The notes under the pieces: model-generated
Seen by the model: the letters and a program-made list of their open reading frames with translations, nothing else
Database searches by the model: none
Told to the model about the DNA's origin: nothing
In this document: in pieces, positions 44,291 through 63,727 of the stretch
Numbering within the stretch: position 1 is the first letter of the stretch
How the letters are laid out: each line of letters starts with the position of its first letter
Position numbers and translations under genes: made by a program
Assembly: GCA_033442325.1 (NCBI GenBank)
Contig: JAWQFM010000007.1
Span: 1,334,351-1,398,350, forward strand
Length of the DNA: 64,000 nucleotides
Direction of reading: 5' to 3'
Source: Salpingoeca rosetta
Taxonomy: Eukaryota; Protista; Choanoflagellata

Positions 44291-46813
<2,523 letters not shown>

Positions 46814-47135: not shown

Positions 47136-48984
47136 ATGGCAGTCCTGTCTTGGCTGGTGTTGTTTGGTTGCGGCTATGTGACGGCGGCAGTGCTGTACCT
47201 CCTGCACATGGAGCACAGCGTGCTCATCATCCGGCCAACCATCTCCACAAAGTGTGTATGTGAGTGTGTGTATATGTGAGTGAGTGTGTATGTGAGTGTG
47301 TGTGTATGTGTGTGTGTGTGTGTATGTGTGTGTGTATGTGAGAGTGTGTGTGAGTAAGCGTGTGAGTGTGTGTGAGCGTGTGGGTGTGTATGTGAGTGAA
47401 AGTGTATGTGAGTGTGAGTGAAATGATGTGATTGCATGAAAATGCAATCATGGTCACATTGCGTTGCTGCTCACTTGCCCACTTGCTCACTTGCTCACTT
47501 GCTCACTTGCTCACTTGCTTGCTTCCTTGATCACTTGCTCACTTTCTCGCTCGTTGTTGCTTGATGGTGTGTGAAAGTGCACTGTTTGTTGCAGCTGGAC
47601 TGACCACGTTGTTCATCGGACTTCTCTTCCCTGCTGTCGACAAGTTCTTCAACAACAAGCCCCGGCCACAAGTACGCACACACGCACACACACACGCACA
47701 CACACGCACACACGCGCACACACACGCGCACGCACACACACACACACACACACAGAACGTTCGCGCGCCTCACTGTCATGCCGTTGCGTCAGCAACCCAA
47801 CTCAACCAAACTTGGTGTTCCCCCTCACACACACACACATACACGCAGGCATGGTCGCTGGTGTTGCGGTCCATTCTCGCCTTGATTGGCGTGGCAATCG
47901 CGGCAGTGGTGAGTTGTTCAGTGGCTTTTGTCTTCTCCCACCTCACGAAGCACATCACAGCCGTGCGGCAAACCATAAGCCGCGTCCCCCTCTTGACCGT
48001 TTCCTCGTCCCTCACATGCCGTCTTGGTGCCTGTGCGCCTCTCACGCGTGTTTGTCCCACAACACGTTCTCGTACCACCCGTTCAGCGGTTCCCATCGCA
48101 GCGCAGCCACGAGCTCAACATCTCTCTCCTCATCATGGCGGTACGTGCATGTGAACGAGGGATGGGACGCCGTACACGTGCGACTTTATTGTGATGTTGC
48201 AGAGTGTTGAAGTTTCTCCTTTCGTTTCAGCCGCCGACTGCATCTGTGCGTGTTCTGCCTGTCGCCTTTCCTCCACTCATCACCTTGTGTTTGTCATATT
48301 CTTCTCTTCACTCTCCCCTCCCCCATGTCCACCTACCCCCTTTGTTTCCCCTTTTACTCCTTGCTTCTCCCTCTCACAACGGTTTCCAGTCATCCATGTG
48401 GTGGCTTGTCGACGGCACGGCCGTTGGCCTGGGCACTGCCGTGGCTGTCACCAGCTTCGGCATCACTGCGTCCCAGTACCTCAGCTACCTAGGCGTACTG
48501 GAGTGAGTCGTGTTGTGCACATGTTGTGCATGTGTTGAGCACGTGTATGCTTGTATTCATGTGTGTGTGTGGTGTACGAGCGCGTGTATGTGTTGCGCTG
48601 CTGCTGTTGCTGCTGTTGTTGTACGGTGTGCTGTGCACCTCAAAGGGCATCGTCTCTGTCTCTCTACATCCCTCTCCCTGTATCTGATCTTTCTGTGATT
48701 TCTGACCGTGTTGCTTCATGTCTTTCGTGTCCCTCACCCATGGAAACACACACACACTCTCTCTCACTCACACACACACACACTCACACTCACACACACT
48801 CACTCACACACATACACTCACTCACACACACACACACACACACATACAAATACTCAATCACTCACCAACACAAACCAGGTGGGCACAGCCGGACTTCTTC
48901 TACGTGCAAGCCACCCTGATCCCCATCTTGTTCCTAGCCACCATGTCCTTTGGCCTCCTTGGTCGACAGCTCGCACGAAGATGA
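47136..48984 (+). CDS. INSIG: Insulin-induced gene (INSIG) homologue
   Basis: Exons MAVLSWLVLFGCGYVTAAVLYLLH..|..GLTTLFIGLLFPAVD..|AWSLVLRSILALIGVAIAAV|..|MWWLVDGTAVGLGTAVAV..SQYLSYLGV..|WAQPDFFYVQATLIPILFLATMSFGLLGRQLARR* match the INSIG pattern (GLLYP.ID; W.SV.R; WW.FD....GLG; PDFLY..; G.IGRQLA). Confidence 0.88.
47470..47525. repeat. (ACTTGCTC)n octamer tandem repeat in INSIG intron 1
   Basis: Direct reading of the sequence. Confidence 0.85.
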
Positions 48985-49041
48985 CGCAGCAAGGGTCCCT
49001 GCACAGCACAACACCCCTAAGCAAGACACACACACACACAA

Positions 49042-49096
<55 letters not shown>

Positions 49097-49499
49097 ATCA
49101 CACACACCCGCGCCAGCTGTTGTAGATAATTAAGCAATATCATCACTAAACATTCTACAAAGCAATCCAACAACAGCCAGGAAGACGAAGCACCCCTTCT
49201 TGCTGCTCGTTCTTCTTCTTTGCGTGGCTGGAGGCAACAACTACAAACACTTTTGTTGGGGTGAACATCACATCTCACATCACCGCGTGTGAGCAGGGCT
49301 GGCTCACAGACACTGACTTGGCTTGACTTTGCAAACCAATATCAGTGCAGCACCTTTGAGAAAGAACGCTCAGCACAAAACAACGACGACGACGCCACCA
49401 TCATCGACACCATCACCTCTCCCTGTAGCAACTGATTCAGGGCACGGGCTGCGTGTTGTTCAGTCCCGACCCACAATACAGCGCACACACAAAGCACAG

Positions 49500-52400
49500 T
49501 GGCGGCCGTTGGCCGCTACTGACGGCCTGTGGTGCTTGCTGCTCGCTGCTGCCCTCGTCCTCGCTGCCTGCGCTCCAGGTGACACACCCTACTCAGCATA
49601 CCTGCTTGCCTTTGATTCCTGCACGTGTGTTGGGGTGGGGGCTTCGTGCACACCTACCTTCGCGCACACGCACATCCACACACACACACACACACACACA
49701 CATCCACACAAACGCACACACATACACACGCAAACACACACACAACCACACACACACACACACATACACACACATCCACACAAACGCACACACATCCACA
49801 CGCAAACACACACACAACCACACACACACACACAAACGCACACACATACACACGCAAACACACACACATCCACACACACACACACACATCCACACACACA
49901 CACACATCCACACACACACACTCTCTCTCTCTGCCTCTGTCTCATTTCCACGCACAACCTCACTCATAAACACACTCACTCTACCCTCCTGCTTCCCCTC
50001 TTCATTCTTCTTGCACGTGGTTCTGCGCGACATTCACTTGCTCGCAGCGTCACTGGCAGCAGGACCACTGGCACCATGTACTGAATGCACAGCCGTGGCT
50101 GTGTTCGACTCCGCCGGCGTTACAGGCACCGTCGAGTTCCAACCATGTTGTGGCAACAAGTTTCTCGTGGATGCGCGTCTGTCCGGCCTCCCCGCCAACG
50201 ACTCGTACACTCTGATGCTCCACGCGCGCCCTGCCATTCACACGTGCGACATCATCCGCCTCGGGCTCCCGTATGGCGCTGCCCCAAACAAGCAGCAGAC
50301 ATCCGTCCACGACTGGATGCAGTATGAAGCAGCCTGTGCCCGTGACGAGAACCTCTGTGCGGTGGGAGACCTGACTGGCAGCGCGGGCGGCGCATTTGAT
50401 GCGTCGCAGTGCACGTCCGGTTCGTGCTTCTCAACCTTGGTGGACCAGGCTGACCTGCCCCTCCAAGGACCCGCAGCCATCGTGCACCTCGCCCTAACGG
50501 TGCGCTCCACATCTCTCCAGGCAGACGGCATCACGCCCAGCACCATCGCATGCGCCCATGTGCAGGCTGTCGCCGGCCAGCCCCCAAGGCTCGCCACGCA
50601 CGACGTGCTGGAGGCTCGTTTCCGCGACTCGCCGTTCATCCTCGGATACATGCGCATGTGGCAGCCATCCAACCACTCCAACCAGGCCACCGCCGTGTTT
50701 CTGGAATACAGGTACCTCAACTCGCTGCAAGGCAGAAGCGAGGGCCACTCGTTCACATCCACGCCAACCCAACAGGCGCAGACGCCGCAAGCGAAACGAC
50801 GGTTTTCGGATCATGGACAACAGCACACATCCACACAAACGCACACACATACACACGCAAACACACACACACACATCCACACACACACTCTCTCTGCCTC
50901 TGTCTCATTTCCACGCACAACCTCACTCATAAACACACTCACTCCACCCTCCTGCTTCCCCTGTTCATTCTTCTTGCACGTGGTTCTGCGCGACATCCAC
51001 TTGCTCGCAGCGTCACTGGCAGCAGGACCACCGGCACCATGCACTGAATGCACAGCCGTGGCTGTGTTCGACTCCGTCGGCGTTACAGGCACCGTCGAGT
51101 TCCAACCATGTTGTGGCAACAAGTTTCTCGTGGATGCGCGTCTGTCCGGCCTCCCCGCCAACGACTCGTACACTCTGATGCTCCACGCGCGCCCTGCCAT
51201 TCACACGTGCGACATCATCCGCCTCGGGCTCCCGTATGGCGCTGCCCCAAACAAGCAGCAGACATCCGTCCACGACTGGATGCAGTATGAAGCAGCCTGT
51301 GCCCGTGACGAGAACCTCTGTGCGGTGGGAGACCTGACTGGCAGCGCGGGCGGCGCATTTGATGCGTCGCAGTGCACGTCCGGTTCGTGCTTCTCAACCT
51401 TGGTGGACCAGGCTGACCTGCCCCTCCAAGGACCCGCAGCCATCGTGCACCTCGCCCTAACGGTGCGCTCCACATCTCTCCAGGCAGACGGCATCACGCC
51501 CAGCACCATCGCATGCGCCCATGTGCAGGCTGTCGCCGGCCAGCCCCCAAGGCTCGCCACGCACGACGTGCTGGAGGCTCGTTTCCGCGACTCGCCGTTC
51601 ATCCTCGGATACATGCGCATGTGGCAGCCATCCAACCACTCCAACCAGGCCACCGCCGTGTTTCTGGAATACAGGTACCTCAACTCGCTGCAAGGCAGAA
51701 GCGAGGGCCACTCGTTCACCATCCACGCCAACCCAACAGGCGCAGACGCCGCAAGCGAAACGCGCCGCTGTCGCTCTGCGGGCTCCCTCTTCGACCCTTT
51801 CAACATCATCAACACAGCAGTGTGCACGGCAGAGTCCACCACCGCGCAGTGCCCCGTCGGTGCGCTGTCTGCGCGCCACGCCCCCCTCAACATTGCCAGC
51901 AACTGGTCAAGCGTGTTTGTCGTGGACGCCGCCCTGCCGCTCACAGGCGCAGCCAGCGTGCAGCAGCGCTCTCTCGTCATCAACGAGCTCGCTGACGTTG
52001 GCCGCCTCGCATGTGCGACGCTGGTGGCGCCAGAAGTGCGCACCGTCACGGCACACTTCTACGGCGACGTTGCTGGCTCGATCGCATTTTCCCAGGCCAG
52101 CACAGACATGCACGCCACCATCACCGTCAGCCTGCACACCGCCACCAACGACACGCATCTGTTTGTGCGCGTGCACGAGCTGCCACTGTTACAGGGCGTG
52201 AGCAGCAGCGATGAGGGCGTGTGCAACACGACGGGACGCGTGTACAACCCCGACAGCTTGCCTGCATGCACGGCTGCCACAGCCAGTGCGGACGGGTGTG
52301 CCCCTGGCGACATTGGCGGCCGGTGGGGTGTGGTGAACGTGACAGCGACAGGCACCAGCAGCAGCAGCAGCAGCAGCAATGATGGCGGAGTGCTTGTTGA

Positions 52401-55400
52401 TGGCGGGGTGACGCTGTTTGGGCCTCGAAGCATTGCTGGGCGGTCTGTTGTGCTGAGCAGGGCTGACGGGCGCGTTGTTGGGTGTGGGAACATTGGGTTT
52501 AGTGGGGGTGTGAAGACGCTTGTGTCGCGGTTTGTTGGGCCGCGCGTGTTTGGGAGCGTGACGTTTCGGCAGCTTGTTGGGCGTGCTGAGACGGAGACGA
52601 GTGTGCTTGTTGATCTTGTTGACGCTGACGGGAGTGGTGCTGGGAGCGATGCTGGGGTTGTGTGGATGATCAGCGGGGAAGCACCTGAGGACGGGGTGAA
52701 CTGTGAGGGGGCGTTGAGCGGGAGCGTGTTCAACCCGTTTGGGGTTGTGTGCGATGGCAGTGGTGACTGCGGTGAGCTGTGTGGTGGAGCCGATGAGCAG
52801 GCGCAGCTTGGGTGCCGTGTTGGGGACCTGAGCAGCAAGCATGGTGCAGCTGCTGTTGGGAGACGGTACATGGTGACTGACGTGCAGCTTCCACTGTCTG
52901 GCGCCAACAGCATCGAGGACCACGTCTTGACCCTGGGCAGCTCACAGGACAGTTCACAGGACAGCACGGGCTCGTGTGCACGTGTGATGCCATTGAGGCC
53001 ATCGCTCGCATCTCCGCTGGCTACCTGCACGGCGAAATTCGCCTCTCCCAGCTGTCCCCCTTCTCCCCTGTCGTCATCCAATCCAGCGTCTCTGGCGCCG
53101 ACATTGCCCAGACGCAGTACACGGTGTCAGCTTACGACCAGCAGTCACCTTACTTCCTCTCGGAACGCGCCCCTTGTGCTGTCGATGCCACGGCTCCAGT
53201 CCTCCAGGTGCGCGTGCTTCTGTACACGCTTGTATATGATTGTTTGTGCTGCTTCTTTGTGCTTCTGTGTGCTTCTGTATGCTTGTGTGCGTTGGCGGGG
53301 GAATCCTCGCCTCCTTATCACAATGCAACTGTTGGTGGTTTTCCCGCTTCTCTCTCTCACTCACTCACACACACACACTCTCTCTCTCACTCTCTCTCAC
53401 TGACACACACACACACACACTCTCTCTTTCCCCACCTCTCACGCACACACAACCACCACACCATGGTGCACACGCTCTTGCATGCGCACGCATCCACGCA
53501 GGCGCTGCTTGATCTTGGGCCGTTTCCAGTGTCATTGTCTTCCCAGGGCGACCCCACCATTGCGCACACAGACACGTCAGTGAATGCCACGCTGTATGGA
53601 CGCACATCGCTCCTCGGTCAGGCCCTCGGGCTGGCGGCTGGTGGCCACGGCGCGTGTGGTCGCATCACATACGCCAGCAGCGACGTGATCACCGCAGCGG
53701 CGTCCTTTGCTGAAAACTCAACCGTCACAGGCATTGTGCTCTTTGAGCAGGACCCGAGCGTGCTGCAGACAACTGTGACGGTCACCCTTGCGCTTGCCAA
53801 CACATCTGCACACATGCCGGTAGACACGGCGCATGTGCGACTGTATGTTGTGGAAGGCGGTGGCGACGGCAGTGGCGTTGGTGATGCGGGCGCGCTGGAG
53901 GCGTGCCGCCGCGGTGACTGGCGGCTGTTCAACCCAACAGCAGCCGAGGTTGACAGCAGCAGCTACGCCGATGACTGTCGCAGTGACGCTGCCTCATGCG
54001 CTCTCGGTCAGTTGCTGGACACTGCGGAATTACTGTCTTGTTTACTGAGATGAAAGCGGTCATTTATTGCTTCTGTGTGTGCGAGCATGTGTGCGCATGC
54101 GCGTACGTTGCGGGGATTGATCTACACAGCAAGCTCCAAGCTTCACCTACCCACCGATTTATTGGTCCATTCAACGCACACGCGTGCATACACGCGCATA
54201 TGTGTGCGTCTGCACTCACACAACGATATGCGCTCACTCATACACGCAACCACACGCACAAACACACACTATCACACGCACATACAGGAGATGTTGCGGG
54301 GCGACAAGGGTACGTGACACTGGACACAACAACGCATTCGTCTTACGTGTTCAGCGATGGAGCACTTGTGCTAAGCGACAGCGAGGGCGAGAGCACCAGC
54401 ATCGTCGGCCAGCTGCTGGCGGTTGTCGCTGAGGAGGACAGCGCCTTGCTGGGCTGCGCACCGATTGGCCAGCTTGAGGAGCGCGTTGTGTCTGCCACAG
54501 CCGGCTCCTCCACCGTCACTGTTCGCCAGTCGTCGCCGCTGCTACCCGCCACCGTCACCACGGACTTTACACAGGCTGCCCAGACGCTGGCCCAGTTTCA
54601 GGTGTCCTCGCGCCCGCTCGACGCCCGTCTGCCAGAGGAGCAGCCGTGTGGGCCTGCGTTTGTGGGCAGCACGTTTGCCCCGTACGCACCACGCGATTGC
54701 ACGGTTGTTGCTGGCCGCCCCTGCGCGCAAGATGCGTTTGCTGCCGGAGATCTCAGCGGCAAGTTTGGGTTTGTGCAGGCGTTACGTCGCGCAAGGCACA
54801 CGTTTGTTGACCACACGGTCACGCTGTTTGGGCCGCGGTCCCTCGCCTATCGCACGCTTGTGCTGATGCAGCTGGGCAATCTCCCTGCGGCGTGCGCGCA
54901 GCTGCTGCCCGTGGTTCCCGTCAACGCCAGTAGCAGCAGTGGTGCGGGAACAGAGGCCGTGTTCACCACCCCCAACGCGCCGTCTACGCTGTATCGTGGC
55001 AGCGTTGGCCTGCGCGCTGCATGGACAGACGCCCTCGCCAGCGTCGCTGTGCTTTCATCGCTGACCCGGAACGATGCGCACGTGTCGGCCCTTTCAGCAG
55101 CGATTGCTGTTGGAGAGGATGTGAGCGGCGCGACGTGGTCACAGCCGCCGCTGCCGCCTGCGCACGTGTGCGAGGCCTTCGTGAGCGACGCTGCCGCTGC
55201 TTTGACGCGGCCGCCGCCGCCACCCATGTGCAGCGAGAGCACGCTGCTTGGGCAGCTGGCGTGCGTGACTGCCAGTGCCATGGCGGAGCAGAGAAGCGCG
55301 CACGCGCTTGCATCGGACGTGCCGGTGCCCGCGTTGGAAGTGTTTGTGCTGCTATCAGTCCAGGAGGGTGACATTGGCATTGGCTCGTCGTTCACGCTGG

Positions 55401-58400
55401 ACGACGCTGACGCTTCACCGTTCCCCACACTGGGCACTGTGGTCAGCCTTGTGCCAACAGCCACTGTTCCCCACAGCGAGGCGGCCGGCACGGAAGCGCC
55501 GACGCTCACGGCTCTCCGCGCCATGCTGAGCGCTGATGCCCCGTCCATCGTCGACTTGTCAGCACAGCAGCTCGCTTTCTCCAATGGCGCTCGCGCGGTG
55601 GTGCTGCGTGCTGTGGCCTCGGCGCCTCGCCTTCATTACCTGCAGTTTATGCATGTGTCGTCCCTGCCGCCAGCTGCCACGACTGCAGTCGCCAACACAA
55701 CAGCTATTGGTGCTGGTGCTGGTGCGTCCTACGCACTTGTGGGCGTGCTGCTGCCATTGCAGCCTGAACCGCCAGCAGGTGCTGGTCGCGCGTGTGCTGC
55801 TCTGACGGCGGTAGGTGAGCAGCAGGCGTGCAGTCTCCTCTGCAGCGGCGGCTGCACGGGACCAGCGCCCTCGGAGTGTGTGGGTGGGTGCCGTAGCCTT
55901 GAGTTTGCCGGCCAGTGTCTGGAGACATGCGAGCAGCTCAGCAACAGCTCCTTCACCCAGGGCGCAACGTGCAAGGCGTGCCACTTTGAATGCGCAGGTG
56001 GCGGGTGCACAGGTCCCACCCCACGCGACTGCGTTGGCGGCTGCCGTCACGCGTATGATCCCGCGGCTGAGGCCTGCGTGCGCGCTTGTCCGCTCGGCAC
56101 GCTCGCTGGCGATGACGGCGTGTGTGCGGAGGACACACGCACTGGTCGCGTGGCGCAGGCAGTACTTCCCAGTGACGGTGAGCAGGAGCGCGTGGTGGAG
56201 TTCTGGCAGGTGTCGGGCAGCAGCGACACGACCATCAGCCAGCGCGGCCTCGACGCGTACGTGTCGTCGTCTGCGTATGTGTGGGAGGTCCGTGAGCTGC
56301 GCACGTCGTTGCCGGTGTTTGGCGATGACGCGTGCAGGGACGACGTCGTTGGGGGCGTGTTCAACCCTGCGCAGTCCACTCGCGACTGCACCACCGCGGA
56401 TCCCTTTGGCTGCCCCGTGGGCCAGCTCAGCCGCAGACATGCCAGCATGCCGCTGCAAGGCAGCACCATCACGGACGTCGCCAGCCCCTTGTTTGGCCAA
56501 GATCTCATCTCAGGCCGCACGCTCGTCATCACCAGCGCAGACGGCACGGAGCGCCTGTGCGCCGTCATCTCGGTGCCGCTTCACCACAGCACGCATGTCG
56601 TGCGGGCCGCCTTTACGTCGCCGTTGCAAGGCAGCGTGGTGGCGCGACAGGCAGTGCGCTTTGACGGCGTGGCGGCGGAGACGCTGCTTGCCGTTGACAT
56701 GCGAGTGGTTGGTGCTGCGCTGGCGGCTCGCGGCCAGGTCACGCACGACTGGGAGGTGCGGGATGGCTCTGTGTTTCCACACGAGACGCTGCAGGCGGAG
56801 TGCGCTGCAACGGGCGCTCTGTTTGATCCATTCAACCAAGGCAGCAACGCCCGCTGTGGCCCAAGCACGATCCCTTCCTCCGTTAGCGGCTACCAGCAGA
56901 ACTGCCGCGTCGGCGACTTGACGAGCAAGCACGGCGCCCTCGCCCTGAGCAGCGAAGTTGCGCTTCGGTTCCAGCGCGTGGACATCCAGCTGCCGCTCCT
57001 TGATGACGGAAGCGTCCTCAACCGCACACTGACTGTGTTGGATGGGGCGACGATGGATGGCGGTGGTGGTGAAGGTGGTGATGCTGGCGGTGTGCTGGCA
57101 TGCGCTGGACTGATCACAGCCGAGCCGCGCCATCTCCTCGCCAACATCACGCTTGCGAGCAGCGGGCTGCTCACGGGTGCGGTGTCGTTCTTCCAGCGCA
57201 CGCCTGATGACACACCCCTCGTTCGCATCGACGTCGAGGGCCTTGGCGGCGCCTTCGCTGACTTTGGCGTGGTGGACGCTCCCCCTGCCGTTGCGTGTGC
57301 CCAGCACGGCGCGCCTGCGTGGTTCAGCCCGTTCACCTCCACCCACGACCCATCGCCCGTGGGCCTCCTGTCTGCCAAGGTTGGCTCGTTCGCTGGCGTG
57401 TTTGTCGGTGTGAGCGGCGCCGTGCTGCCAGACGCGGAACTGCCGCTCTCTGGCCCGCACAGCATCGCTGGCCGAACACTCGTCGTGACAAACGCGACAA
57501 CGGGCGCGGCAGCCGTGTGCGCGCGCATTGTGGACACTGAGTGGCGCAGGCGCGCCGTCGCCGATGTGCGTGGGAGCGTCGAGGGCAAGGTTGTGTTTGA
57601 GCAGCAGCACGACGTGTCGCAGGAGACGATGATCACGGTTTCGCTCGCTGCGAGTGCACAGGCGCCAGCGGGCCCCTTTGTGTGGCAGCTGCAGAGCGAT
57701 GCGTACAACTGCACCGTGGGCACTCCCCTCAACTCGTACAACGTGTGTGTGGCTGAGAGCTGCGATTACGAGGCGCAGTGCGGGCTAGCCGCGCAGCAGC
57801 GCGGGTGCACTGTTGGTGATTTGACAAGCAAGCATGGTGTGCTTTCTGTTTCGCCAGCGGGCGTGTCTGGCGTGTTTTCCGACCTTCTCCTGCCTGTCAG
57901 CGAGGATGTGTCTGGGAGCGTGCTTGTTGTGTACACGGAGGACACGAGCGAAGTGGTTGGCTGTGGGAGTGTTCGTGTCGTGCAAGCTCCAGCAGACCGC
58001 ACGACCACGACCACCACAACCACAACCACGACTACCACAACCACCACGACTACCACCACAACCACGACTACCACCACGACTACCACCACAGCCTCGACGA
58101 CCCAAGCCCGACCAACCACCACGACTGCCACACAGCGTATGTGTTGCCACCACCGCCTCTGTGTTGTTTGCACATAATGGTTACGTGCTGCATCATTTCT
58201 CGCTGGCAGCCTGCGTATGTTGTCTTACCTGCGAACTCGTTGCATTTTCAGCTCATGCACGGTTGCAAACGCACATTCGCAAACTCACAAACGACACCCT
58301 GCACACACACTACACACACACAATGCACGCACATCGCCCACACATGGATTTGCACACACATACACGCACACTCCACGCACGCACACTCCACACAAACACA

Positions 58401-60379
58401 CACACACACTCCACACACCCCATACACACATACACACTCCACACACGCACACTCCACACAAACACACACACACTCCACACTCCACACACGCACACTCCAC
58501 ACAAACACACACACACTCCACACTCCACACTCCACACTCCACACTCCACACAAATACACACACACACTCCACACTCCCCGCAGGTGTGACACGATATGCG
58601 CTGCTAGAGCTTGTTGGGCTTGGCTCCGTCACTAACAGCATGGTGGATACGCTTGCAAACACATTGCATGGCGAGATTGCATCAGCGTGCGCGTGCAGCG
58701 TGCAGGTGACGATTGTGGATATCATCAACACACGCGACAGCAGCAGCAGCAGCGGCAGCGGCAACCGTCGTCGTCGTGCCACAACGTCAATTCAGGTGTT
58801 GTATTCAGCGAGCAGTAGTGTTGTGTCTGGTGCGCTGCTGGCGGGCGCCATGGATGCTGCCGTGTCATCTGGTGGTGTGCTGACACGGCTACGCACAAGC
58901 AGCGGTGGTGGTACGTTTGCCGACGTGAGCGGCGTGTTTCAAGGGGATGTTTCTGCCACGGAGGCTGCGGCGCGGTCATCGGAGACGGGTGCTGACAGCG
59001 GCGCGAGCTCGGGTGGCGGATCTGGCAGTGTTCCCATCCCCATCATTGCTGGCGCTGCCGGCGGGTTTGTTGTGCTGTGTGCGCTGATCGCGTGCGTGGT
59101 TGTTCGGGGCCGCCGCCGCCGTCATCGTGGCGATGCGCTTCGCGACATCAAGTCGTGGAGCAGCGGTGGGCGGCACGGCACGGCGACCAGCACGGCGTCG
59201 GCGGCAACAACAGTGGGACACGGGGCGAGACCGTCACACTCGTCCTCCATTTACCTGCTGGGCAGCCAGAGCACCGACGCGCCGTCGCCACCCATGCGCG
59301 GCCGCACATACACCAACGGCGGCACAAGCAAGCTGCCGTGTCCAGACACCACGGACAGCGAAGGGTATGCCATCCCCTCTGTCATCTTTAGTCAGGGGCA
59401 CAAGGCCGGCACGTCCGGCGAGGAAGGCGGGCTGGGGCTGGCAGACAACAACGCGGCCGAGCCTGCGACGGCATACATCAAGGCCATGCCACTCAAGCCG
59501 CTTCGGGGCGATGGCAGCGCTGGCGGCGTGGTGGACAAGAATGCGACATCGGCGTCGGCGTCACTGCCAGGCGGGGATGCGCGTCGCTCCATGCTGCTGC
59601 CACGCCCCAGCAGCTGCGTGGTTGCGCGTGCCCTGCACGACTATGATTCGGCCGAGGACACGGTTCTTGCCCTCAAGGCCGGCGACATGGTGGAGGTGAC
59701 GGAGAAGGCGGACAATGGGTGGTGGTGCGGGAAGATTGGTGCGCGCTCCGGCTGGTTCCCATCGTCGTTTGTGCAGGTGGAGACGGTGGAGGAGACGGTG
59801 GTGGATGATCTGCCATCGCGCCTGCCCTCCGTTGTAGAGCGTGCAGAGCTTGAATCTGGCGACCGCACTGCCGGTCGTGACAGCAGCGGCGGCGGCAGCA
59901 GCAGCAGCAGCAGGGACAACAAGCGCACATCTCTTCTCCCTCCTCCTCCCCCGCGGCTCGCTGCAGCAACGGTAGCAGCTGGGGCGTCGAAGGCAGGTGA
60001 GGAGGAAAAGGCAACGAAAGACGGGCGCAAGCGGCCAACACCACCACAGCGCAATTCGTCCACAGCTGCCAGCCTGAACACGAGCAATACAGCACCACCT
60101 GCAACCTCAACAGCCGCGCGGGCACAAGGGCTGATGGGCGCCTTGAACAAACAGCTGGCAGCTCAGCTGGGGCAGCAGCAACAGCAACAACAGCAACGGC
60201 AAACGCGCGCTAAGCCTGTCAAGCCTGAAAGGAAGCAAAGCAAGTCTTCACCATCGTCATCATCGCAGCCAGTCAGTGCCCCGACCAACACGACACAACA
60301 AGCATCCACACCAGCGGAGTCTGCTGTCGACAAGACTCGCGACAACAACAGCAGCAATAACAGCACCAGCCATACCACC

Positions 60380-60452
<73 letters not shown>

Positions 60453-63184
60453 CAGCGAGCAGAGCGGAGAAGCCCTCGGGCCAGGAAGGGGCCAGCGAAA
60501 CCACCACGACCGCCGCCGCCGCCGCAGCAGCAGCAGCAGTCACCGTGATGGTTGCGCAGTATGCTTATGACCCTTCAGAAGGGGACGGATTGAAGCTGAC
60601 ATCTGGAGCAGAGGTGGAAGTGTCCCTTGTGCGTGATGATGGCTGGGCGTACGGCAGCTGCGAGGGCGCCGTGGGCTGGTTCCCTGCATCATATGTTGTG
60701 CCCAAGGACAGCGAACAAAATGCAGGTGGGCCCGGAAACCAGGGCAAGGGTACGCGGGCAAGCGACCTGTACGACAACGTGGGGGACGATGAGGAACTTG
60801 AGGACATGTATGAGCAGCTGTATGCGTTCCCGGTTGAGGCGGAGCCTGCTCCTTCTGGGCCGGATGCGTGCTACACTGCATTGTATGCGTACAGGCCAGT
60901 TGGGGAGGCGGATCTGGAGCTGCATGAGGACGACGTGTTGACGGTCATCGACAAGACAGGGGACTGGTGGCTGGGCAGGATTGGGGTGCGTGAGGGCTGG
61001 TTCCCGGGGACATATGTGAAACACACGCCTGAAAAGTACCGTCAACTCGCTGCGCAATCTGTCTTGCCGCCCCCGCCGTTGCCGCCTCCGAATCGCGGGA
61101 AGCAGCAGCAGCAGCAGCACAAGGAGGAAGGTGTACAGGGCGCGGGTCGTGCTAGCACGGAGGCAGCACCTGCAGCAGCAGCGGTGGCGAAGGACACGCC
61201 CTCCACCGCGCAGTTCCCAGCCTCTTCAGCACCGGCACCACCGCCAGCGCCGCCACCACCAGGGGCACCTTCGTCAGGAGCAGCGACCTCAACCGCCGTG
61301 TCAAAGAGCGTGAAGATGAAGGCAAAGCCACCACCTCCAAACAAGAGCAAGGCCAAGCAGCAACAGCAACAGCAACAGCAACAAGGAGGTACGCAATCGC
61401 CCGCCACCAACCCAATGGCCATACAGAGTGAGCTGGCGGCTGCTCTTGGGAAGCGGGGTGGTGCTGCCAATGAGTCCAACGGGGAGACTCACGACAGCAG
61501 CAGCAGCGGCAGCAGTAGCAAGGCTGGGAAACCGCTGCCAGCTGCGCTCCGCACTGCGCCATCAGAGCCCAGTGGCAAGGGGGCACGTCGACTGCCGCCC
61601 CCCACGTCTGCGCCGCCGTCGCGCAAGCCACCGCCTCCAGTTGGGCAGGGCCGCAGCAGCAGCGGCGGGAAGCGCCAACAGCAACGGGGTGTGTCACGCC
61701 GTTCCCATGTGCGCAACCTGCGTCCACAGAGAGCCGTGCCTGCACCACCACCGCCGCCACCAACCGCCGCACCTGCACAAGCGCCAAAGGCGGCGCCCAC
61801 TGCAGCAAGTATGAAAAAGAAGCCGCCGCCGCCACAAGCGAGAGGAGCGGGGAAGCAGGAGGAGCAGCAAGATGCAGCGAAGATGCAGCTTGCCCCGCTG
61901 CCTGCAGCGCCTGCAGCGCCTGCAGCACAAAGTCCACATCAGCAGCCGTCAACGGGGGCAAAGACAGCACAGCAGCAGCAGCTCCGGGAACTGGCGCAGG
62001 TGGCAGCACAGCGGCATCCATCCTCCAGTGACGTGACTGCCAACAACAAAGCAACTGCTTTGACGTCTTCGTCGGCTGCTGCATTTTCTTCTTCGTCAAC
62101 ACAGGCGGCGTCGGTTGTCGTGCACGCGAAACCGCGTCCTCCACCGCCATCCAAGCAGGCGCCAACACGAAGCAGCGAAGCGCCTGCACCTGCTGCACGC
62201 GCTGCACCTGAACCAACCAAGCCTGCGTTGGCAGGCAGCGCGGTGAAGAAGGACGGCGCACGTGTGAGCACCGCAGCAGCGGTGACGACTGCAAAGACGG
62301 ATGGTGCGGATAACTCAGGTGCCGGGCGGCCGAAACCGCCACCGCCGAAGAAGCCAGGTCAACTTGCCGGCCACAAGGTCGCGCCCGCCGCCACCAAACC
62401 AGCACCTGCAGCCAGGGAGGGCGGCGTTGGTGGTGGTGATGGTACGAATGGCTATGGCAACAATGGCAACAATTTGGTAAAGGAGCTGGGGAAATCCCTC
62501 AAGCAGCAAGCACCCGCGACATCAGGGGCAGCAGCTCCCCATGCTGACAAGGGCGCGAAGCACAAGCTGCCACCACCGCGAGCGACAGCAGCCGTCACGC
62601 AGGCGCCGCCGTCGAGTGCGCTGCCGCCCCCACGTCAAGCGCGCCCAGCCAAACAGCAGCAGCAACAGTCAGCACAGCCTGTACAGTCTGTACCGCCAGC
62701 TCAGCAGCAACAGCCACAGCGTGAGCAGCAGCCAGCGCAACGACCACAGCGCAAGCCGAGTGTGAGACCCACAACCAGGCCGGTAGGGAGCCCTGGGGTG
62801 AAGAAGCCCGCAACAGCGCCTGCGTCGGGCGCATCAACAGCGGCACCACGTGCAAGCGTGAAAGCGACACCAGCGCGTACAGCGCCTGCCCTGACCAAAC
62901 CACAGGCGGCAGTGTCACCGTCAGCACCAGCTAAGCCGCGCGCCCCTGCACGGGCATCAACAGCACGCAAGCCACCCGCTCACGCTTTGAGCCGAGACGG
63001 CGGAGACACCAAGACGAGCAGTTCCCGCACACCACCCGCACCCTCGTCGTCAACGCCGGCATCAGCAGCATCTGCAACGACAACGGCAGCAACGTCAGGA
63101 CCATCGCGGCCCTCGGCACCATCTGTGCGCAAGTCGGCACCAACAGCGACGCCACCCGCCTCCCGCAAGCACCCGAACCACCAC

Positions 63185-63236
<52 letters not shown>

Positions 63237-63439
63237 CACAGCGACGACCAGCACCGCGGGCGACTCGTGTGCCTGCGAGCTCGAGTTCTTCTTCGTCGTC
63301 GCCTTCGACTGCGGGGCCTTCACGCCCAGCTGCACGCGCAAGCACGCGCACAGGTGGCGCTTCGCAGGGTGCGCCGAGCCGACCACCAGCACGCCCATCT
63401 GCTGGGCCGCGCGCACGAACCAGCAACCAGGCCTCGTCA

Positions 63440-63470
<31 letters not shown>

Positions 63471-63727
63471 CTGTGGCGGCTGCACGGAAGCGTACAAACC
63501 CGGGCGAAGCGAGCACGGCGAAGAAAAACAAGGGGGGTGGCGACGGAGGTGGATCGAGCGTGTGCAAGGCGATTGTGACGTATGTGGCACGAACGGCGGA
63601 GGAGCTGTCGTTTGAGGAAGGCGAGGTGATTGTTCAGCTTTCACCCGCCGTGAATGGGATCTGCAAAGGCATGAAACAGGATGGCACAGTCGGCACCTAT
63701 CGTGCTGCTCACGTCGATTCCTTCTAA
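49500..63727 (+). CDS. Giant single-pass receptor-like protein: signal peptide, ~11-12 Cu/Zn-SOD-fold repeats, furin-like Cys repeats, Thr stalk, SEA-like module, TM, four SH3 domains and Pro-rich tail
   Basis: Signal exon LWCLLLAAALVLAACAP|gt ends at 49578. Further exons 50048 (or 51011) to ~53207 (frame break at ~52990), 53502-54006, 54288-58136 and 58584-63727. Repeats share G.V.F.Q..C..G..FNP..C.VGDLS.KHG..D..LPL.G..SI.GR.LV..C. Furin repeats 55826-56126; TM 59029-59104; SH3 at ~59620-59780, 60548-60706, 60872-61026 and 63562-63724. The 5' end is unresolved. Confidence 0.8.
49920..51762 (+). repeat. 963-bp-period tandem duplication of an intron 3' end plus the first 1.5 SOD-like repeats
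   Basis: Copy 1 ~49920-50798, copy 2 ~50883-51762. Six substitutions (49982, 50000, 50034, 50069, 50079, 50114) and a 1-bp deletion near 50757 in copy 1. Confidence 0.93.

What the first reader, a model, noticed from the sequence alone, without database searches (positions are those of the whole stretch)
49500..63727. Giant SOD-repeat transmembrane receptor with an SH3/proline-rich signalling tail (top candidate novel system)
Seen: about 4,000 codons forming signal peptide, 7 SOD-fold repeats, a degenerate repeat/linker, furin-like Cys repeats, 4 more SOD-fold repeats, Thr stalk, SEA-like module, TM, and a ~1,540-aa cytoplasmic region with four SH3 domains. Splice phases join ectodomain and tail into one gene (intron 58137-58583). 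Known: animals have extracellular Cu-only SOD repeat proteins (CSRP) made of a few tandem SOD domains with the same GDLS.KHG and L.G..SI.GRS motifs, typically GPI/surface-anchored with no cytoplasmic signalling domains; choanoflagellates are known for unusual receptor domain shuffles. I know of no described protein coupling SOD repeats to intracellular SH3s. Inference: the Greek-key SOD barrel has been co-opted as an Ig/cadherin-like repeat in a non-catalytic adhesion, prey-capture or redox-sensing receptor linked to tyrosine-kinase and actin machinery.
Basis: partly seen in the sequence, partly recalled or inferred. Interest (0 to 1): 0.88.

Follow-up and report, generated by a model that had tools for sequence, protein, structure and literature searches.

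The report
Copper-dead SOD-repeat receptor with SH3 tail
A choanoflagellate gene encodes a ~4,000-residue single-pass membrane protein whose outside is a chain of superoxide-dismutase-shaped domains without copper sites and whose inside carries four SH3 domains; relatives, including Capsaspora's known "CSRP", share the layout, which the CSRP papers I could read do not mention.

Summary
On the + strand, 49.5-63.7 kb carries one multi-exon gene. It encodes a signal-like segment, at least 11 Cu-only-SOD-fold repeats, and an unassigned 296-residue stretch. Then come a furin-like/EGFR-domain-IV Cys module, a Thr stalk, a juxtamembrane alpha/beta module, one TM helix and a 1,540-residue tail with four SH3 domains.

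Stranded RNA-seq covers the exons and not the introns. Two introns are confirmed by spliced contigs. The intron joining ectodomain and tail (58137-58583) has the same position and phase in an environmental orthologue. A Choanoeca flexa transcript and the Capsaspora gene model carry SOD repeats, TM and SH3 in one ORF.

No repeat keeps more than one of the four copper ligands, so this is a pseudo-enzyme array.

The window's assembly is faulty here. Reads show sequence missing at 52989/52990, probably an extra repeat pair. There is an untested 963-bp tandem duplication, and no ATG was found for exon 1.

The gene belongs to the known CSRP/SOD4 lineage, but the SH3 tail is absent from the CSRP papers I could read. 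I rate it a new variant of a known kind. Function is inferred: an adhesion or sensing scaffold.

The scan has also noted other SOD-fold membrane proteins elsewhere in this genome.

The parts
49503..49578 (+). Exon 1 end: hydrophobic signal-peptide-like segment (RPLAATDGLWCLLLAAALVLAACAP). The donor GT is at 49579, phase 1. No ATG in frame or nearby.
   Evidence: The orthologue L001 has ATG plus a signal peptide in the equivalent exon, and the intron sits at the same place.
49579..51010 (+). Intron 1 with (CA)n-rich sequence. It has two possible acceptors, 50047 (copy 1) and 51010 (copy 2). It contains copy 1 of a 963-bp near-identical tandem duplication (~49925-50795; copy 2 is ~50888-51760). 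Copy 1 holds R1 plus half of R2 and a 1-bp deletion near 50757.
   Evidence: Which acceptor is used, and whether copy 1 is real or an assembly artefact, was not tested.
51011..52985 (+). Exon with SOD-fold repeats R1 (51040-51534), R2 (51556-52032), R3 (52033-52503) and R4 (52504-52983).
52986..52990 (+). Assembly break, seen as an apparent frame 0 to frame 2 shift. Reads and contigs leave the window at 52989/52990, and at least 292 nt are missing. The loose letters read in frame as MAEPARTVVAA... and ...TVTPPSAARP|IEAIARIS. This matches the orthologue, which has an extra R3'-R4' pair at this spot.
   Evidence: loose ends in X15, X1 and X4. (the letters occur nowhere in the assembly). (L001 sequence).
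52986..54006 (+). R5, a degenerate repeat split by intron 53208-53501, and the first part of R6. Donor at 54007, phase 1.
   Evidence: spliced contig of X4 with GT..AG.
54007..54287 (+). Intron, phase 1, inside the C.xGD motif of R6.
   Evidence: (X4 spliced contig and 2 reads of X14).
54288..58136 (+). Large exon: end of R6, R7 (54473-54910), an unassigned 296-residue region (54911-55798), the furin-like module, R8 (56141-56578), R9 (56579-57121), R10 (57122-57541), R11 (57542-57988) and the Thr stalk.
   Evidence: RNA depth over the whole exon.
55829..56122 (+). Cys-rich furin-like / EGFR domain IV-like module.
   Evidence: GF_recep_IV 43.4 bits and Furin-like 37.7 bits, both over their cut-offs.
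57998..58135 (+). Mucin-like Thr stalk (30 consecutive Thr, then ASTTQARPTTTTATQ).
58137..58583 (+). Intron joining ectodomain and tail: GTATGT...CAG, phase 1, with an in-frame stop inside.
   Evidence: RNA depth is 0 in 58200-58399, and an X4 contig starts to fit the window exactly at 58584 with 136 unplaced letters before it. The orthologue L001 has an intron at the same codon and phase.
58584..59032 (+). Extracellular juxtamembrane alpha/beta module with strand-helix order b-a-b-b-a-b. It has a conserved CxC and a conserved RRRR (58766-58777) in the b2-b3 loop.
   Evidence: conserved in L001 and C. flexa. (pLDDT 60). (Z 9.3 to PCDH15 MAD12, Z 8.3 to MUC16 SEA). No Pfam SEA hit.
59033..59104 (+). 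Transmembrane helix PIPIIAGAAGGFVVLCALIACVVV, followed by RGRRRRHRG.
   Evidence: The same motif occurs in L001 and L006.
59303..59494 (+). Conserved cytoplasmic Tyr-containing motifs: RTYTNGGTSKLPCPD..DSEGYAIP and EPATAYIKAMPL.
   Evidence: (nearly identical in the 52%-identical orthologue).
59618..59788 (+). SH3 domain 1.
60545..60712 (+). SH3 domain 2.
60869..61033 (+). SH3 domain 3, followed by the conserved LPPPPLPPPN (61064-61093).
61034..63559 (+). Low-complexity, proline-rich region with many SH3-ligand-type motifs.
   Evidence: 40 PxxP against 21.6 +/- 4.1 in shuffles; 9 class I and 10 class II motifs against 2.6 +/- 1.6.
63560..63727 (+). SH3 domain 4 at the very C-terminus (...HVDSF) and the stop codon.
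   Evidence: Conserved in L001.

Best explanation
SHOWN
- One gene on the + strand encodes a type I membrane glycoprotein of about 4,000 residues. It is probably longer, because the assembly has lost sequence at 52989/52990.
- It is a divergent member of the CSRP/SOD4 lineage, the tandem Cu-only-SOD-fold proteins of holozoans.
- Its ectodomain holds at least 11 SOD barrels. They keep the fold and the conserved disulfide (9 of 9 aligned repeats; a second Cys pair in 7 of 9) but have lost the copper ligands, so they cannot dismutate superoxide.
- The barrels are interrupted by an EGFR-domain-IV-like Cys module and are raised on a Thr-rich stalk.
- A ferredoxin-like juxtamembrane module carries a conserved RRRR in the loop where SEA domains cut themselves.
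- Behind one TM helix lies a 1,540-residue tail with conserved Tyr motifs, four SH3 domains and about 40 PxxP motifs.

INFERRED
- The barrels serve as rigid, Ig- or cadherin-like spacer and binding modules of a surface adhesion or sensing receptor.
- The RRRR may be a proprotein-convertase site that turns the receptor into a two-chain form.
- The tail acts as a multivalent SH3/PxxP scaffold. It could bind its own proline motifs and those of partners, and so tie ligand-driven clustering to cortical actin or endocytic machinery, perhaps gated by tyrosine phosphorylation.
- Capsaspora's copper-competent CSRP has the same TM + SH3 layout. The SH3-tailed form may therefore be old in Holozoa, with animal CSRPs keeping only the anchor.
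For: Architecture
- Pfam, profile and fold results.
- TM segment.

Expression and splicing
- Stranded RNA reads lie on the exons only, with first mates all on the - strand, so the RNA is +.
- Spliced contigs cross two introns, and one contig starts to fit the window exactly at the acceptor 58584.

One gene
- The intron between stalk and juxtamembrane module has the same position and phase in the orthologous TARA scaffold L001. That scaffold has the same order of parts and four SH3 domains.
- A second environmental locus, L006/L007, has SOD ORFs followed by an SH3 ORF with the same TM motif.
- The C. flexa transcript P0047 has three SOD repeats, the same juxtamembrane module, a TM segment and three SH3 domains in one ORF.
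- Capsaspora P0154 has 11 Pfam Sod_Cu stretches, a TM segment and an SH3 domain.
- The exon after the intron begins with an extracellular module and has no signal peptide of its own.

Not a pseudogene
- The loose read ends at the frame break continue in frame and match the orthologue.
- The protein is 52% identical to P0001 over 1,024 residues.

Copper loss
- At the four ligand columns the nine aligned repeats carry 0 or 1 His, whereas 27 of the 44 homologous domains aligned with them carry all four.
- The orthologues' equivalent repeats also lack them.

Tail
- PxxP and class I/II motifs are enriched over shuffles.
- The motifs and SH3 domains are conserved in L001.
Against: - No read was listed that spans 58136 to 58584 in this organism. 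RNA depth there is below 1x, and the Thr-stalk repeat was masked.
- Exon 1 has no ATG, so the true 5' end is unknown.
- The locus is misassembled at one place at least, and the 963-bp duplication was not tested.
- The function is pure inference: no ligand, localisation or partner is known.
- The juxtamembrane model is of low confidence (pLDDT 60), and its fold matches (Z 8-9.5) are near the level common for unmatched models.
- SH3 tails in Capsaspora and in choanoflagellates could be independent fusions. Their SH3 domains are only weakly alike (E 3e-7).
Confidence: 0.62

Rival explanations
1. Two separate genes lie side by side. One encodes a secreted, mucin-tipped SOD-repeat protein ending near 58177. 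The other encodes an independent TM-SH3 adaptor starting after 58217. The in-phase join would then be a coincidence.
For: There is an in-frame stop at 58175-58177 and an ATG-initiated ORF from 58217. No junction read was listed.
Against: - The ORF's first 120 codons are a translated CA-repeat, and RNA depth there is zero.
- The contig that covers 58584 onward fits from exactly the acceptor.
- The intron position and phase are conserved in L001.
- A C. flexa transcript and the Capsaspora model hold both halves in one ORF.
- The second half starts with an extracellular module that has no signal peptide.
Confidence: 0.07
2. It is a working extracellular superoxide dismutase like oyster CSRP or fungal SOD5: a catalytic ecto-enzyme that happens to have a long tail.
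For: It is homologous to CSRPs and SODs. Oyster CSRP dismutates superoxide (PMC12217663, as cited in PMC13017621). The genome has a p22phox-like gene, so surface superoxide production is plausible.
Against: None of the nine aligned repeats has more than one of the four copper ligands. R5 and R6 lack them by eye. The loss is shared with orthologues that are 42-52% identical. The unassembled repeats were not seen; their orthologous counterparts in L001 repeat R3/R4, which lack the site.
Confidence: 0.05
3. It is a decaying or chimeric locus: a pseudogene or an assembly artefact whose apparent 4,000-codon frame is not translated as such.
For: There is a frame break at 52985/6, no start ATG, and a near-identical duplication with a 1-bp deletion.
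Against: - Reads show that the frame break is missing sequence which continues in frame.
- The exons are transcribed and spliced.
- Long open frames persist, with conserved Cys, Gly and Pro positions.
- An orthologue has the same parts, and 52% amino-acid identity argues for constraint.
Confidence: 0.06
4. It is a redox-linked receptor. The copper-less barrels still bind copper weakly, or bind superoxide or peroxide-modified ligands. The SH3 tail would recruit the NADPH-oxidase complex through the proline-rich tail of p22phox, as p47phox does.
For: SH3-1's best solved match is p47phox SH3A. A p22phox-like gene is present. The Capsaspora relative keeps its copper sites.
Against: The p47phox rank comes from summing two domains. 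The single-domain score is 46.9 bits, about the same as for Asef at 45.4 bits, so the SH3 is generic. There are no ligand residues in the barrels.
Confidence: 0.1

Closest known systems
CSRP / SOD4 family (Cu-only SOD repeat proteins of animals, choanoflagellates and Capsaspora; PMC13017621, PMC10416458)
   Same: Both have tandem SOD beta-barrels with short linkers. Both keep the conserved disulfide and have lost the Zn site and the electrostatic loop (gap in the alignments). Both have a signal-like N-terminus and a membrane anchor after the last repeat. The motifs C..G..FNP, C.VGDLS.KHG and LPL.G..SI.GR are shared.
   Different: - Animal CSRPs have 4-6 repeats, most with intact copper sites, and are described as GPI-anchored or secreted. 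Among the hits, the median tail after the hydrophobic segment is 23 residues.
- Here there are at least 11 repeats, none with a copper site.
- Here there are also an inserted furin-like module, a Thr stalk, a juxtamembrane module and a 1,540-residue SH3/PxxP tail.
Capsaspora owczarzaki CAOG_08503 / KJE90024.1 / A0A0D2X116 (listed as the Capsaspora CSRP with 12 repeats)
   Same: An SOD-repeat ectodomain, one TM helix followed by an Arg run, then a proline-rich tail with an SH3 domain.
   Different: The Capsaspora repeats mostly keep HxH...H...H. It has no furin-like module, Thr stalk or juxtamembrane module. Its tail is only 229 residues with one SH3 domain.
Candida albicans SOD5 (Cu-only SOD; PDB 5cu9, 4n3t)
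   Same: It is the best structural match of the modelled repeat R9 (Foldseek E 2.4e-7, TM 0.70 by target). It has the same loss of the Zn site and the electrostatic loop.
   Different: SOD5 is a single-domain, GPI-anchored, copper-loaded enzyme.
SEA domains (MUC16, Gpr126) and the MAD12 domain of protocadherin-15
   Same: All are membrane-adjacent extracellular ferredoxin-like b-a-b-b-a-b modules below a long repeat array. VIA Z is 9.3 (MAD12), 8.3 (MUC16 SEA) and 7.2 (Gpr126).
   Different: There is no sequence match to Pfam SEA and no GSVVV self-cleavage motif; a conserved RRRR sits in that loop instead. The model confidence is low.
Multi-SH3 adaptor proteins (CIN85/CD2AP, intersectin, Grb2, p47phox)
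   Same: Several canonical SH3 domains are interspersed with PxxP-rich disordered stretches. The single SH3 domains score E 1e-9 to 1e-11 against these proteins.
   Different: Those proteins are soluble cytosolic adaptors. Here the SH3 array is the covalently attached tail of a surface protein.

Membership tests
CSRP / SOD4 | [quoted passage not shown] | tested here: met
   The profile of 9 repeats hits PDB SODs at E 5e-18 over the full length. The R9 model has pLDDT 85.6, and its top fold hits are SOD5 and SOD1. At least 10 repeat matches lie in the window.
CSRP / SOD4 | Conserved intradomain disulfide (SOD1 C57-C146 equivalents) | tested here: met
   Both Cys columns are invariant in all 53 aligned domains, including all 9 window repeats.
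CSRP / SOD4 | Loss of the Zn site and of the electrostatic loop VII | tested here: met
   The HMMER alignments to SOD1 show a 16-residue gap in the repeats at the electrostatic loop. No His is present at the Zn-ligand positions.
CSRP / SOD4 | Intact copper site (four His) in most repeats | tested here: not met
   At the ligand columns 63, 65, 96 and 190 of A3, the window repeats have 0 or 1 His. Of the 44 homologous domains aligned with them, 27 have all four.
CSRP / SOD4 | N-terminal secretion signal | tested here: inconclusive
   A hydrophobic segment ends exon 1, but there is no ATG in 48982-49578. The orthologue L001 has ATG plus a signal peptide.
CSRP / SOD4 | C-terminal membrane anchor (GPI or TM) with essentially no cytoplasmic domain | tested here: not met
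   A TM segment is present (59033-59104), but it is followed by 1,540 residues with four SH3 domains. Typical hits have a median tail of 23 residues.
CSRP / SOD4 | Superoxide dismutase activity | not testable with these tools
   This needs recombinant protein, metal analysis and an activity assay. The sequence predicts no activity.
SEA domain | Sequence match to the SEA family | tested here: not met
   No Pfam SEA hit for 58586-59380, even at E up to 10.
SEA domain | Ferredoxin-like b-a-b-b-a-b fold next to the membrane | tested here: inconclusive
   The model has that order of elements but pLDDT 60. Foldseek found nothing at E up to 0.001. VIA gave Z 8.3 to MUC16 SEA and 9.3 to PCDH15 MAD12, close to the background level for unmatched models.
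SEA domain | G/SVVV autoproteolysis motif between b2 and b3 | tested here: not met
   The loop holds SSSSSGSGNRRRRATT instead. The RRRR is conserved in L001, and C. flexa has RRRS.
SH3 domain | Match to the SH3 family models over the cut-off | tested here: met
   SH3_1 scores 116.6 bits in four stretches. The individual domains hit solved SH3 domains at E 1e-9 to 1e-11.
Furin-like / EGFR domain IV Cys-rich repeats | Match over Pfam's gathering score | tested here: met
   GF_recep_IV 43.4 bits (cut-off 29.5); Furin-like 37.7 bits (cut-off 26.8).

The most novel reading that the evidence does not exclude
The ancestral holozoan CSRP was not a free ecto-enzyme. It was a transmembrane receptor whose SOD array was wired through one helix to an SH3/PxxP signalling scaffold. 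On this reading Capsaspora keeps the copper-active form, choanoflagellates turned it into a copper-dead giant adhesion or sensing receptor with a convertase-cut juxtamembrane module, and animals kept only the anchored enzyme. Extracellular redox chemistry would then have been coupled directly to cortical signalling before animals arose.
Probability: 0.25. Interest if true: 0.8.

Novelty: new variant of a known kind. Interest (0 to 1): 0.6.

Why it matters
CSRP/SOD4 proteins are treated in the literature as extracellular enzymes that are GPI-anchored, TM-anchored or secreted. Their function is called enigmatic outside oysters and frog tail regeneration.

[quoted passage not shown] There the same domain array is the ectodomain of a true receptor-like protein with a large SH3/proline-rich cytoplasmic scaffold. 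In choanoflagellates the array has lost every copper site while keeping the fold.

That gives three things:
- A clean natural example of an enzyme fold recruited as a structural repeat.
- A new class of candidate adhesion or sensing receptors for choanoflagellate biology (collar, prey capture, colony formation).
- A testable hypothesis about what CSRPs did before animals.

It also flags that the public assembly is wrong at this locus, with a collapsed repeat pair, so existing gene models here are probably truncated or split.

Tried and rejected
- Word-indexed protein search with the tail and with the juxtamembrane-to-SH3-1 piece. Nothing scored. Low-complexity words probably flooded the candidate list, so these blanks carry no information.
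- Search for the loose-end 30-mers in the window's own assembly. They are absent, which supports missing sequence rather than a misplaced contig.
- ESM Atlas look-ups for the 296-residue unassigned region and for the juxtamembrane/SH3-1 piece. There were no usable hits; weak GPS/GAIN rows at 0.76-0.85 are below reliability.
- Profile-profile test of whether the unassigned region 54911-55798 is a degenerate SOD repeat. Probability was 0.1%, so it is not supported, and the region stays unassigned.
- Foldseek of the juxtamembrane model against the PDB. Nothing at E up to 0.001.
- The p47phox lead for SH3-1. Rejected as a specific signature after looking at single-domain scores.
- My first guess for the acceptor of the second intron (53546) was wrong. 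The spliced contig puts it at 53501.
- The Robinett 2018 JBC review could not be read because it is not held. 'Not described' therefore rests on the 2025-2026 CSRP papers, the SOD4 paper and full-text searches.
- I could not determine whether this gene is the PTSG_08625 entry listed for Salpingoeca rosetta. Records of the window's own genome seem to be withheld from the protein searches.
- No complex prediction was run.
Full report
WHAT IS THERE

The window is G000:C7:1334351-1398350 of a 55.4-Mb, 68-contig eukaryotic assembly. Three things point to a choanoflagellate, most likely Salpingoeca rosetta, though I could not prove the species: the genome size, the (CA)n-rich introns, and nearest relatives from Choanoeca flexa, Salpingoeca infusionum and marine metagenomes.

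From about 49.3 to 63.7 kb the + strand holds four very long open frames. They join by GT..AG introns in matching phases:

| Part | Coordinates | Note |
|---|---|---|
| Exon 1 | ends 49578 | phase 1 |
| Exon 2 | 51011-52985 | or from 50048 |
| Frame break | 52985/6 | assembly hole, see below |
| Exon | 52986-53207 | |
| Intron | 53208-53501 | |
| Exon | 53502-54006 | |
| Intron | 54007-54287 | |
| Exon | 54288-58136 | |
| Intron | 58137-58583 | phase 1 on both sides |
| Last exon | 58584-63727 | |

The joined model has 3,985 codons.

DOMAINS

- Pfam gives Sod_Cu (47 bits summed in the 53996-58174 ORF, weaker single hits elsewhere), GF_recep_IV/Furin-like above cut-off at 55829-56122, and four SH3 domains.
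- I delimited eleven SOD-like repeats, R1-R11.
- An alignment of the nine repeats that lie within single exons (A2) gives a profile that hits solved Cu/Zn SODs end to end at E 5e-18 to 1e-8, and Cu-only SOD5 at 5e-8. The alignments show a gap exactly at the electrostatic loop.
- With a 53-row alignment of homologous domains, R9 folds at pLDDT 85.6 and pTM 0.84. Its best PDB fold matches are C. albicans SOD5, then Cu/Zn SODs.
- The SOD-barrel claim is therefore confirmed by sequence and by model.

THE COPPER SITE IS GONE

In the 53-row alignment the family consensus reads WHVH...GGHFNP...V.H, which holds the four copper ligands. 27 of the 44 homologous domains carry all four.

The nine window repeats carry 0 or 1 of the four. 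The two disulfide Cys are invariant, and a second Cys pair is kept in seven of nine. R5 and R6 are split by introns and lack the ligands by eye. The equivalent repeats of the 42-52%-identical orthologues lack them too. The loss is therefore old and the fold is still under constraint. This agrees with the scan's other note on this stretch (s1-443382).

TRANSCRIPTION AND SPLICING

Two 2026 stranded RNA-seq runs of the same species cover the exons at 1-7x, with all first mates on the - strand, so the RNA is +. They give zero depth in 53200-53599 and 58200-58399.

An RNA-derived contig of run X4 (4,565 nt) is spliced at 53207/53502 and 54006/54288. Another X4 contig (1,462 nt) begins to fit the window exactly at 58584, the predicted acceptor, at its letter 137. 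Its first 136 letters should lie on the Thr-stalk repeat, but the tool masked that repeat.

No read spanning 58136/58584 was listed, and depth there is below 1x. Direct proof of this one junction in this organism is therefore still missing.

COMPARATIVE EVIDENCE FOR ONE GENE

A search of 1.84 billion representatives with the large exon found 239 relatives.

- The best hit (P0001, 52% identity over 1,024 residues) lies on a 16-kb TARA Oceans scaffold, L001. L001 repeats the whole gene: an ATG/signal exon, an intron at the same place, R1-R4, an extra near-identical R3'-R4' pair, R5 onward, a Thr stalk, a 130-nt intron, and then the juxtamembrane module, TM and four SH3 domains. That intron sits at exactly the same codon and phase as 58137-58583.
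- A JGI metagenome locus (L006/L007) has SOD ORFs followed by an SH3-rich ORF with the same LPIIAGAAGG TM motif.
- A Choanoeca flexa transcript (P0047) has three SOD repeats, the same CxC/RRR juxtamembrane module, a TM segment and three SH3 domains in one ORF.
- Capsaspora KJE90024.1 (A0A0D2X116) has 11 Pfam Sod_Cu stretches (13 by my own profile), a TM segment and one SH3 domain.

I put the single-gene reading at about 0.9.

THE ASSEMBLY IS WRONG AT THIS LOCUS

- RNA reads of X15 (4 and 7 reads) and contigs of X1 and X4 leave the window at 52989 and re-enter at 52990. That is exactly where the frame jumps from 0 to 2.
- The loose letters occur nowhere in the assembly. By my own reading they translate in frame as ...GSCARVM-AEPARTVVAA and TVTPPSAARP-IEAIARIS. 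These line up with L001's ...GCGRAM-EEPTREVRAAV and TATLPSAAKP-ISAVV, which flank the extra R3'-R4' pair.
- So the 'frameshift' is a collapsed repeat, not decay. The real protein probably has 13 or more repeats.
- Separately, 49925-50795 and 50888-51760 are a 963-bp near-identical tandem duplication. It covers part of the intron, R1 and half of R2, and copy 1 has a 1-bp deletion. L001 has no such duplication.
- No ATG exists between 48982 and 49578, so the start codon is unresolved.

THE JUXTAMEMBRANE MODULE

The 150 residues before the TM helix are conserved in L001 (51% identity) and in C. flexa (25%), including a CxC and a basic run, RRRR or RRRS.

- The model is weak (pLDDT 60) but has the b-a-b-b-a-b order, and the RRRR lies in the disordered b2-b3 loop.
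- Foldseek finds nothing significant.
- The exhaustive aligner ranks HMG-CoA reductase subdomains, PCDH15 MAD12 (Z 9.3) and MUC16 SEA (Z 8.3) on top. That is near the usual background for unmatched models.
- 'SEA-like' is thus a fair description of position and probable fold class. It is not a membership.
- The idea that RRRR is a convertase site at the place where SEA domains self-cleave is my inference.

THE TAIL

- It has 1,540 residues and is rich in Ala, Pro, Ser and Gln.
- PxxP occurs 40 times against 21.6 +/- 4.1 in shuffles. Class I and class II SH3 ligands occur 9 and 10 times against 2.6 +/- 1.6.
- Conserved with the orthologue are two Tyr-containing motifs just inside the membrane (RTYTNGGT.KLPCPD..DSEGYAIP and EPAT.YIKA.PL), all four SH3 domains, VEETVVDDLPSRLPS, LPPPPLPPPN, and the C-terminal SH3 ending in HVDSF.
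- SH3-1 ranks p47phox first. Its single-domain score (46.9 bits) is no better than the score for Asef (45.4 bits), so I dismiss a specific NADPH-oxidase signature.

WHAT IS KNOWN

- The 2026 review of the family (PMC13017621) defines CSRPs as 4-12 tandem Cu-only SOD domains that are GPI-anchored or secreted.
- Its Table S1 lists Capsaspora CAOG_08503/A0A0D2X116, M. brevicollis 37745 and S. rosetta PTSG_08625.
- The review never mentions SH3, transmembrane segments or choanoflagellates in its text.
- The SOD4 paper (PMC10416458) defines the same family by a signal peptide, several SOD domains and a C-terminal TM domain. It notes members in choanoflagellates and Filasterea.
- Full-text searches for SOD together with SH3 in this context found nothing.
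- Among 153 SOD-repeat proteins in my hit set, the median tail after the post-SOD hydrophobic segment is 23 residues. Only the Capsaspora, C. flexa and S. infusionum proteins have tails of 200 or more residues; the S. infusionum tail carries an SH2 domain.

VERDICT

It is one gene with high probability.

It belongs to the CSRP/SOD4 lineage by descent. It fails two of that family's working definitions, namely copper sites and a bare anchor. It shares its receptor-like layout with relatives in at least four other unicellular holozoan sources.

The new elements are these:
- a copper-dead array of 11 or more repeats,
- the inserted Cys-rich module,
- the stalk and the juxtamembrane module,
- the four-SH3 scaffold tail,
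- the recognition that Capsaspora's 'CSRP' has an SH3 tail too.

Function is inferred, not shown: an adhesion or sensing receptor acting through a multivalent SH3/PxxP scaffold.

The scan has also noted other SOD-fold membrane proteins elsewhere in this genome. I saw one of them on contig 14.

Noticed in passing
G000:C14:756487-771888 (loci L003-L005), not in the window: A second giant gene: a 5,134-codon open frame with a signal-like start and at least 4 SOD-like repeats (762517-766002). It has a TM segment at residue ~4019 and cytoplasmic repeats ending ...TEELYEVQGKASTLRKKPPAP. It looks orthologous to S. infusionum P0046, which has SOD x2, Ig-like domains, a TM segment and a C-terminal SH2. 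Part of it reads N (withheld).
   Followed up: partly
window 52989-52990: The public assembly lacks sequence here, at least 292 nt and probably about 1 kb. DNA-like contigs (X1) and RNA both show it. Any gene model built on this assembly will be frameshifted or split at this point.
   Followed up: yes
window 49925-50795 and 50888-51760: A 963-bp near-identical tandem duplication covers part of intron 1, R1 and half of R2. Copy 1 carries a 1-bp deletion. It is absent from the orthologous scaffold L001. Whether it is a real recent duplication or an assembly artefact is unknown.
   Followed up: partly
window 48982-49578: There is no ATG in any frame over about 600 nt that include the signal-peptide-like exon 1. 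The start codon of the gene is not found.
   Followed up: partly
G000:C11:1368918-1369781 (L010, L011): A p22phox-like (Cytochrom_B558a, 48 bits) gene is present in two exons, so a Nox2-type oxidase partner probably exists in this organism.
   Followed up: no
window 44300-46813, - strand: The upstream neighbour is a cytochrome-b5 / front-end desaturase-like gene (HPGG and HHLFP motifs) on the opposite strand, interrupted by a run of N near 45400-45500. The two genes would share a divergent intergenic region.
   Followed up: no
window 58362: A contig of run X1 has a 15-nt insertion (CACGCACACTCCACG) inside the CA-rich intron. This is a length polymorphism of the intronic repeat.
   Followed up: no
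L001:14085-15659: On the TARA scaffold the gene downstream of the orthologue encodes a bZIP_Maf transcription factor (E 7e-10).
   Followed up: no
window 54911-55798: A 296-residue ectodomain stretch between R7 and the furin-like module has no detectable family. It is not SOD-like by profile comparison, and the Atlas hints at GPS/GAIN are below reliability. It is conserved in P0001 and P0002.
   Followed up: partly
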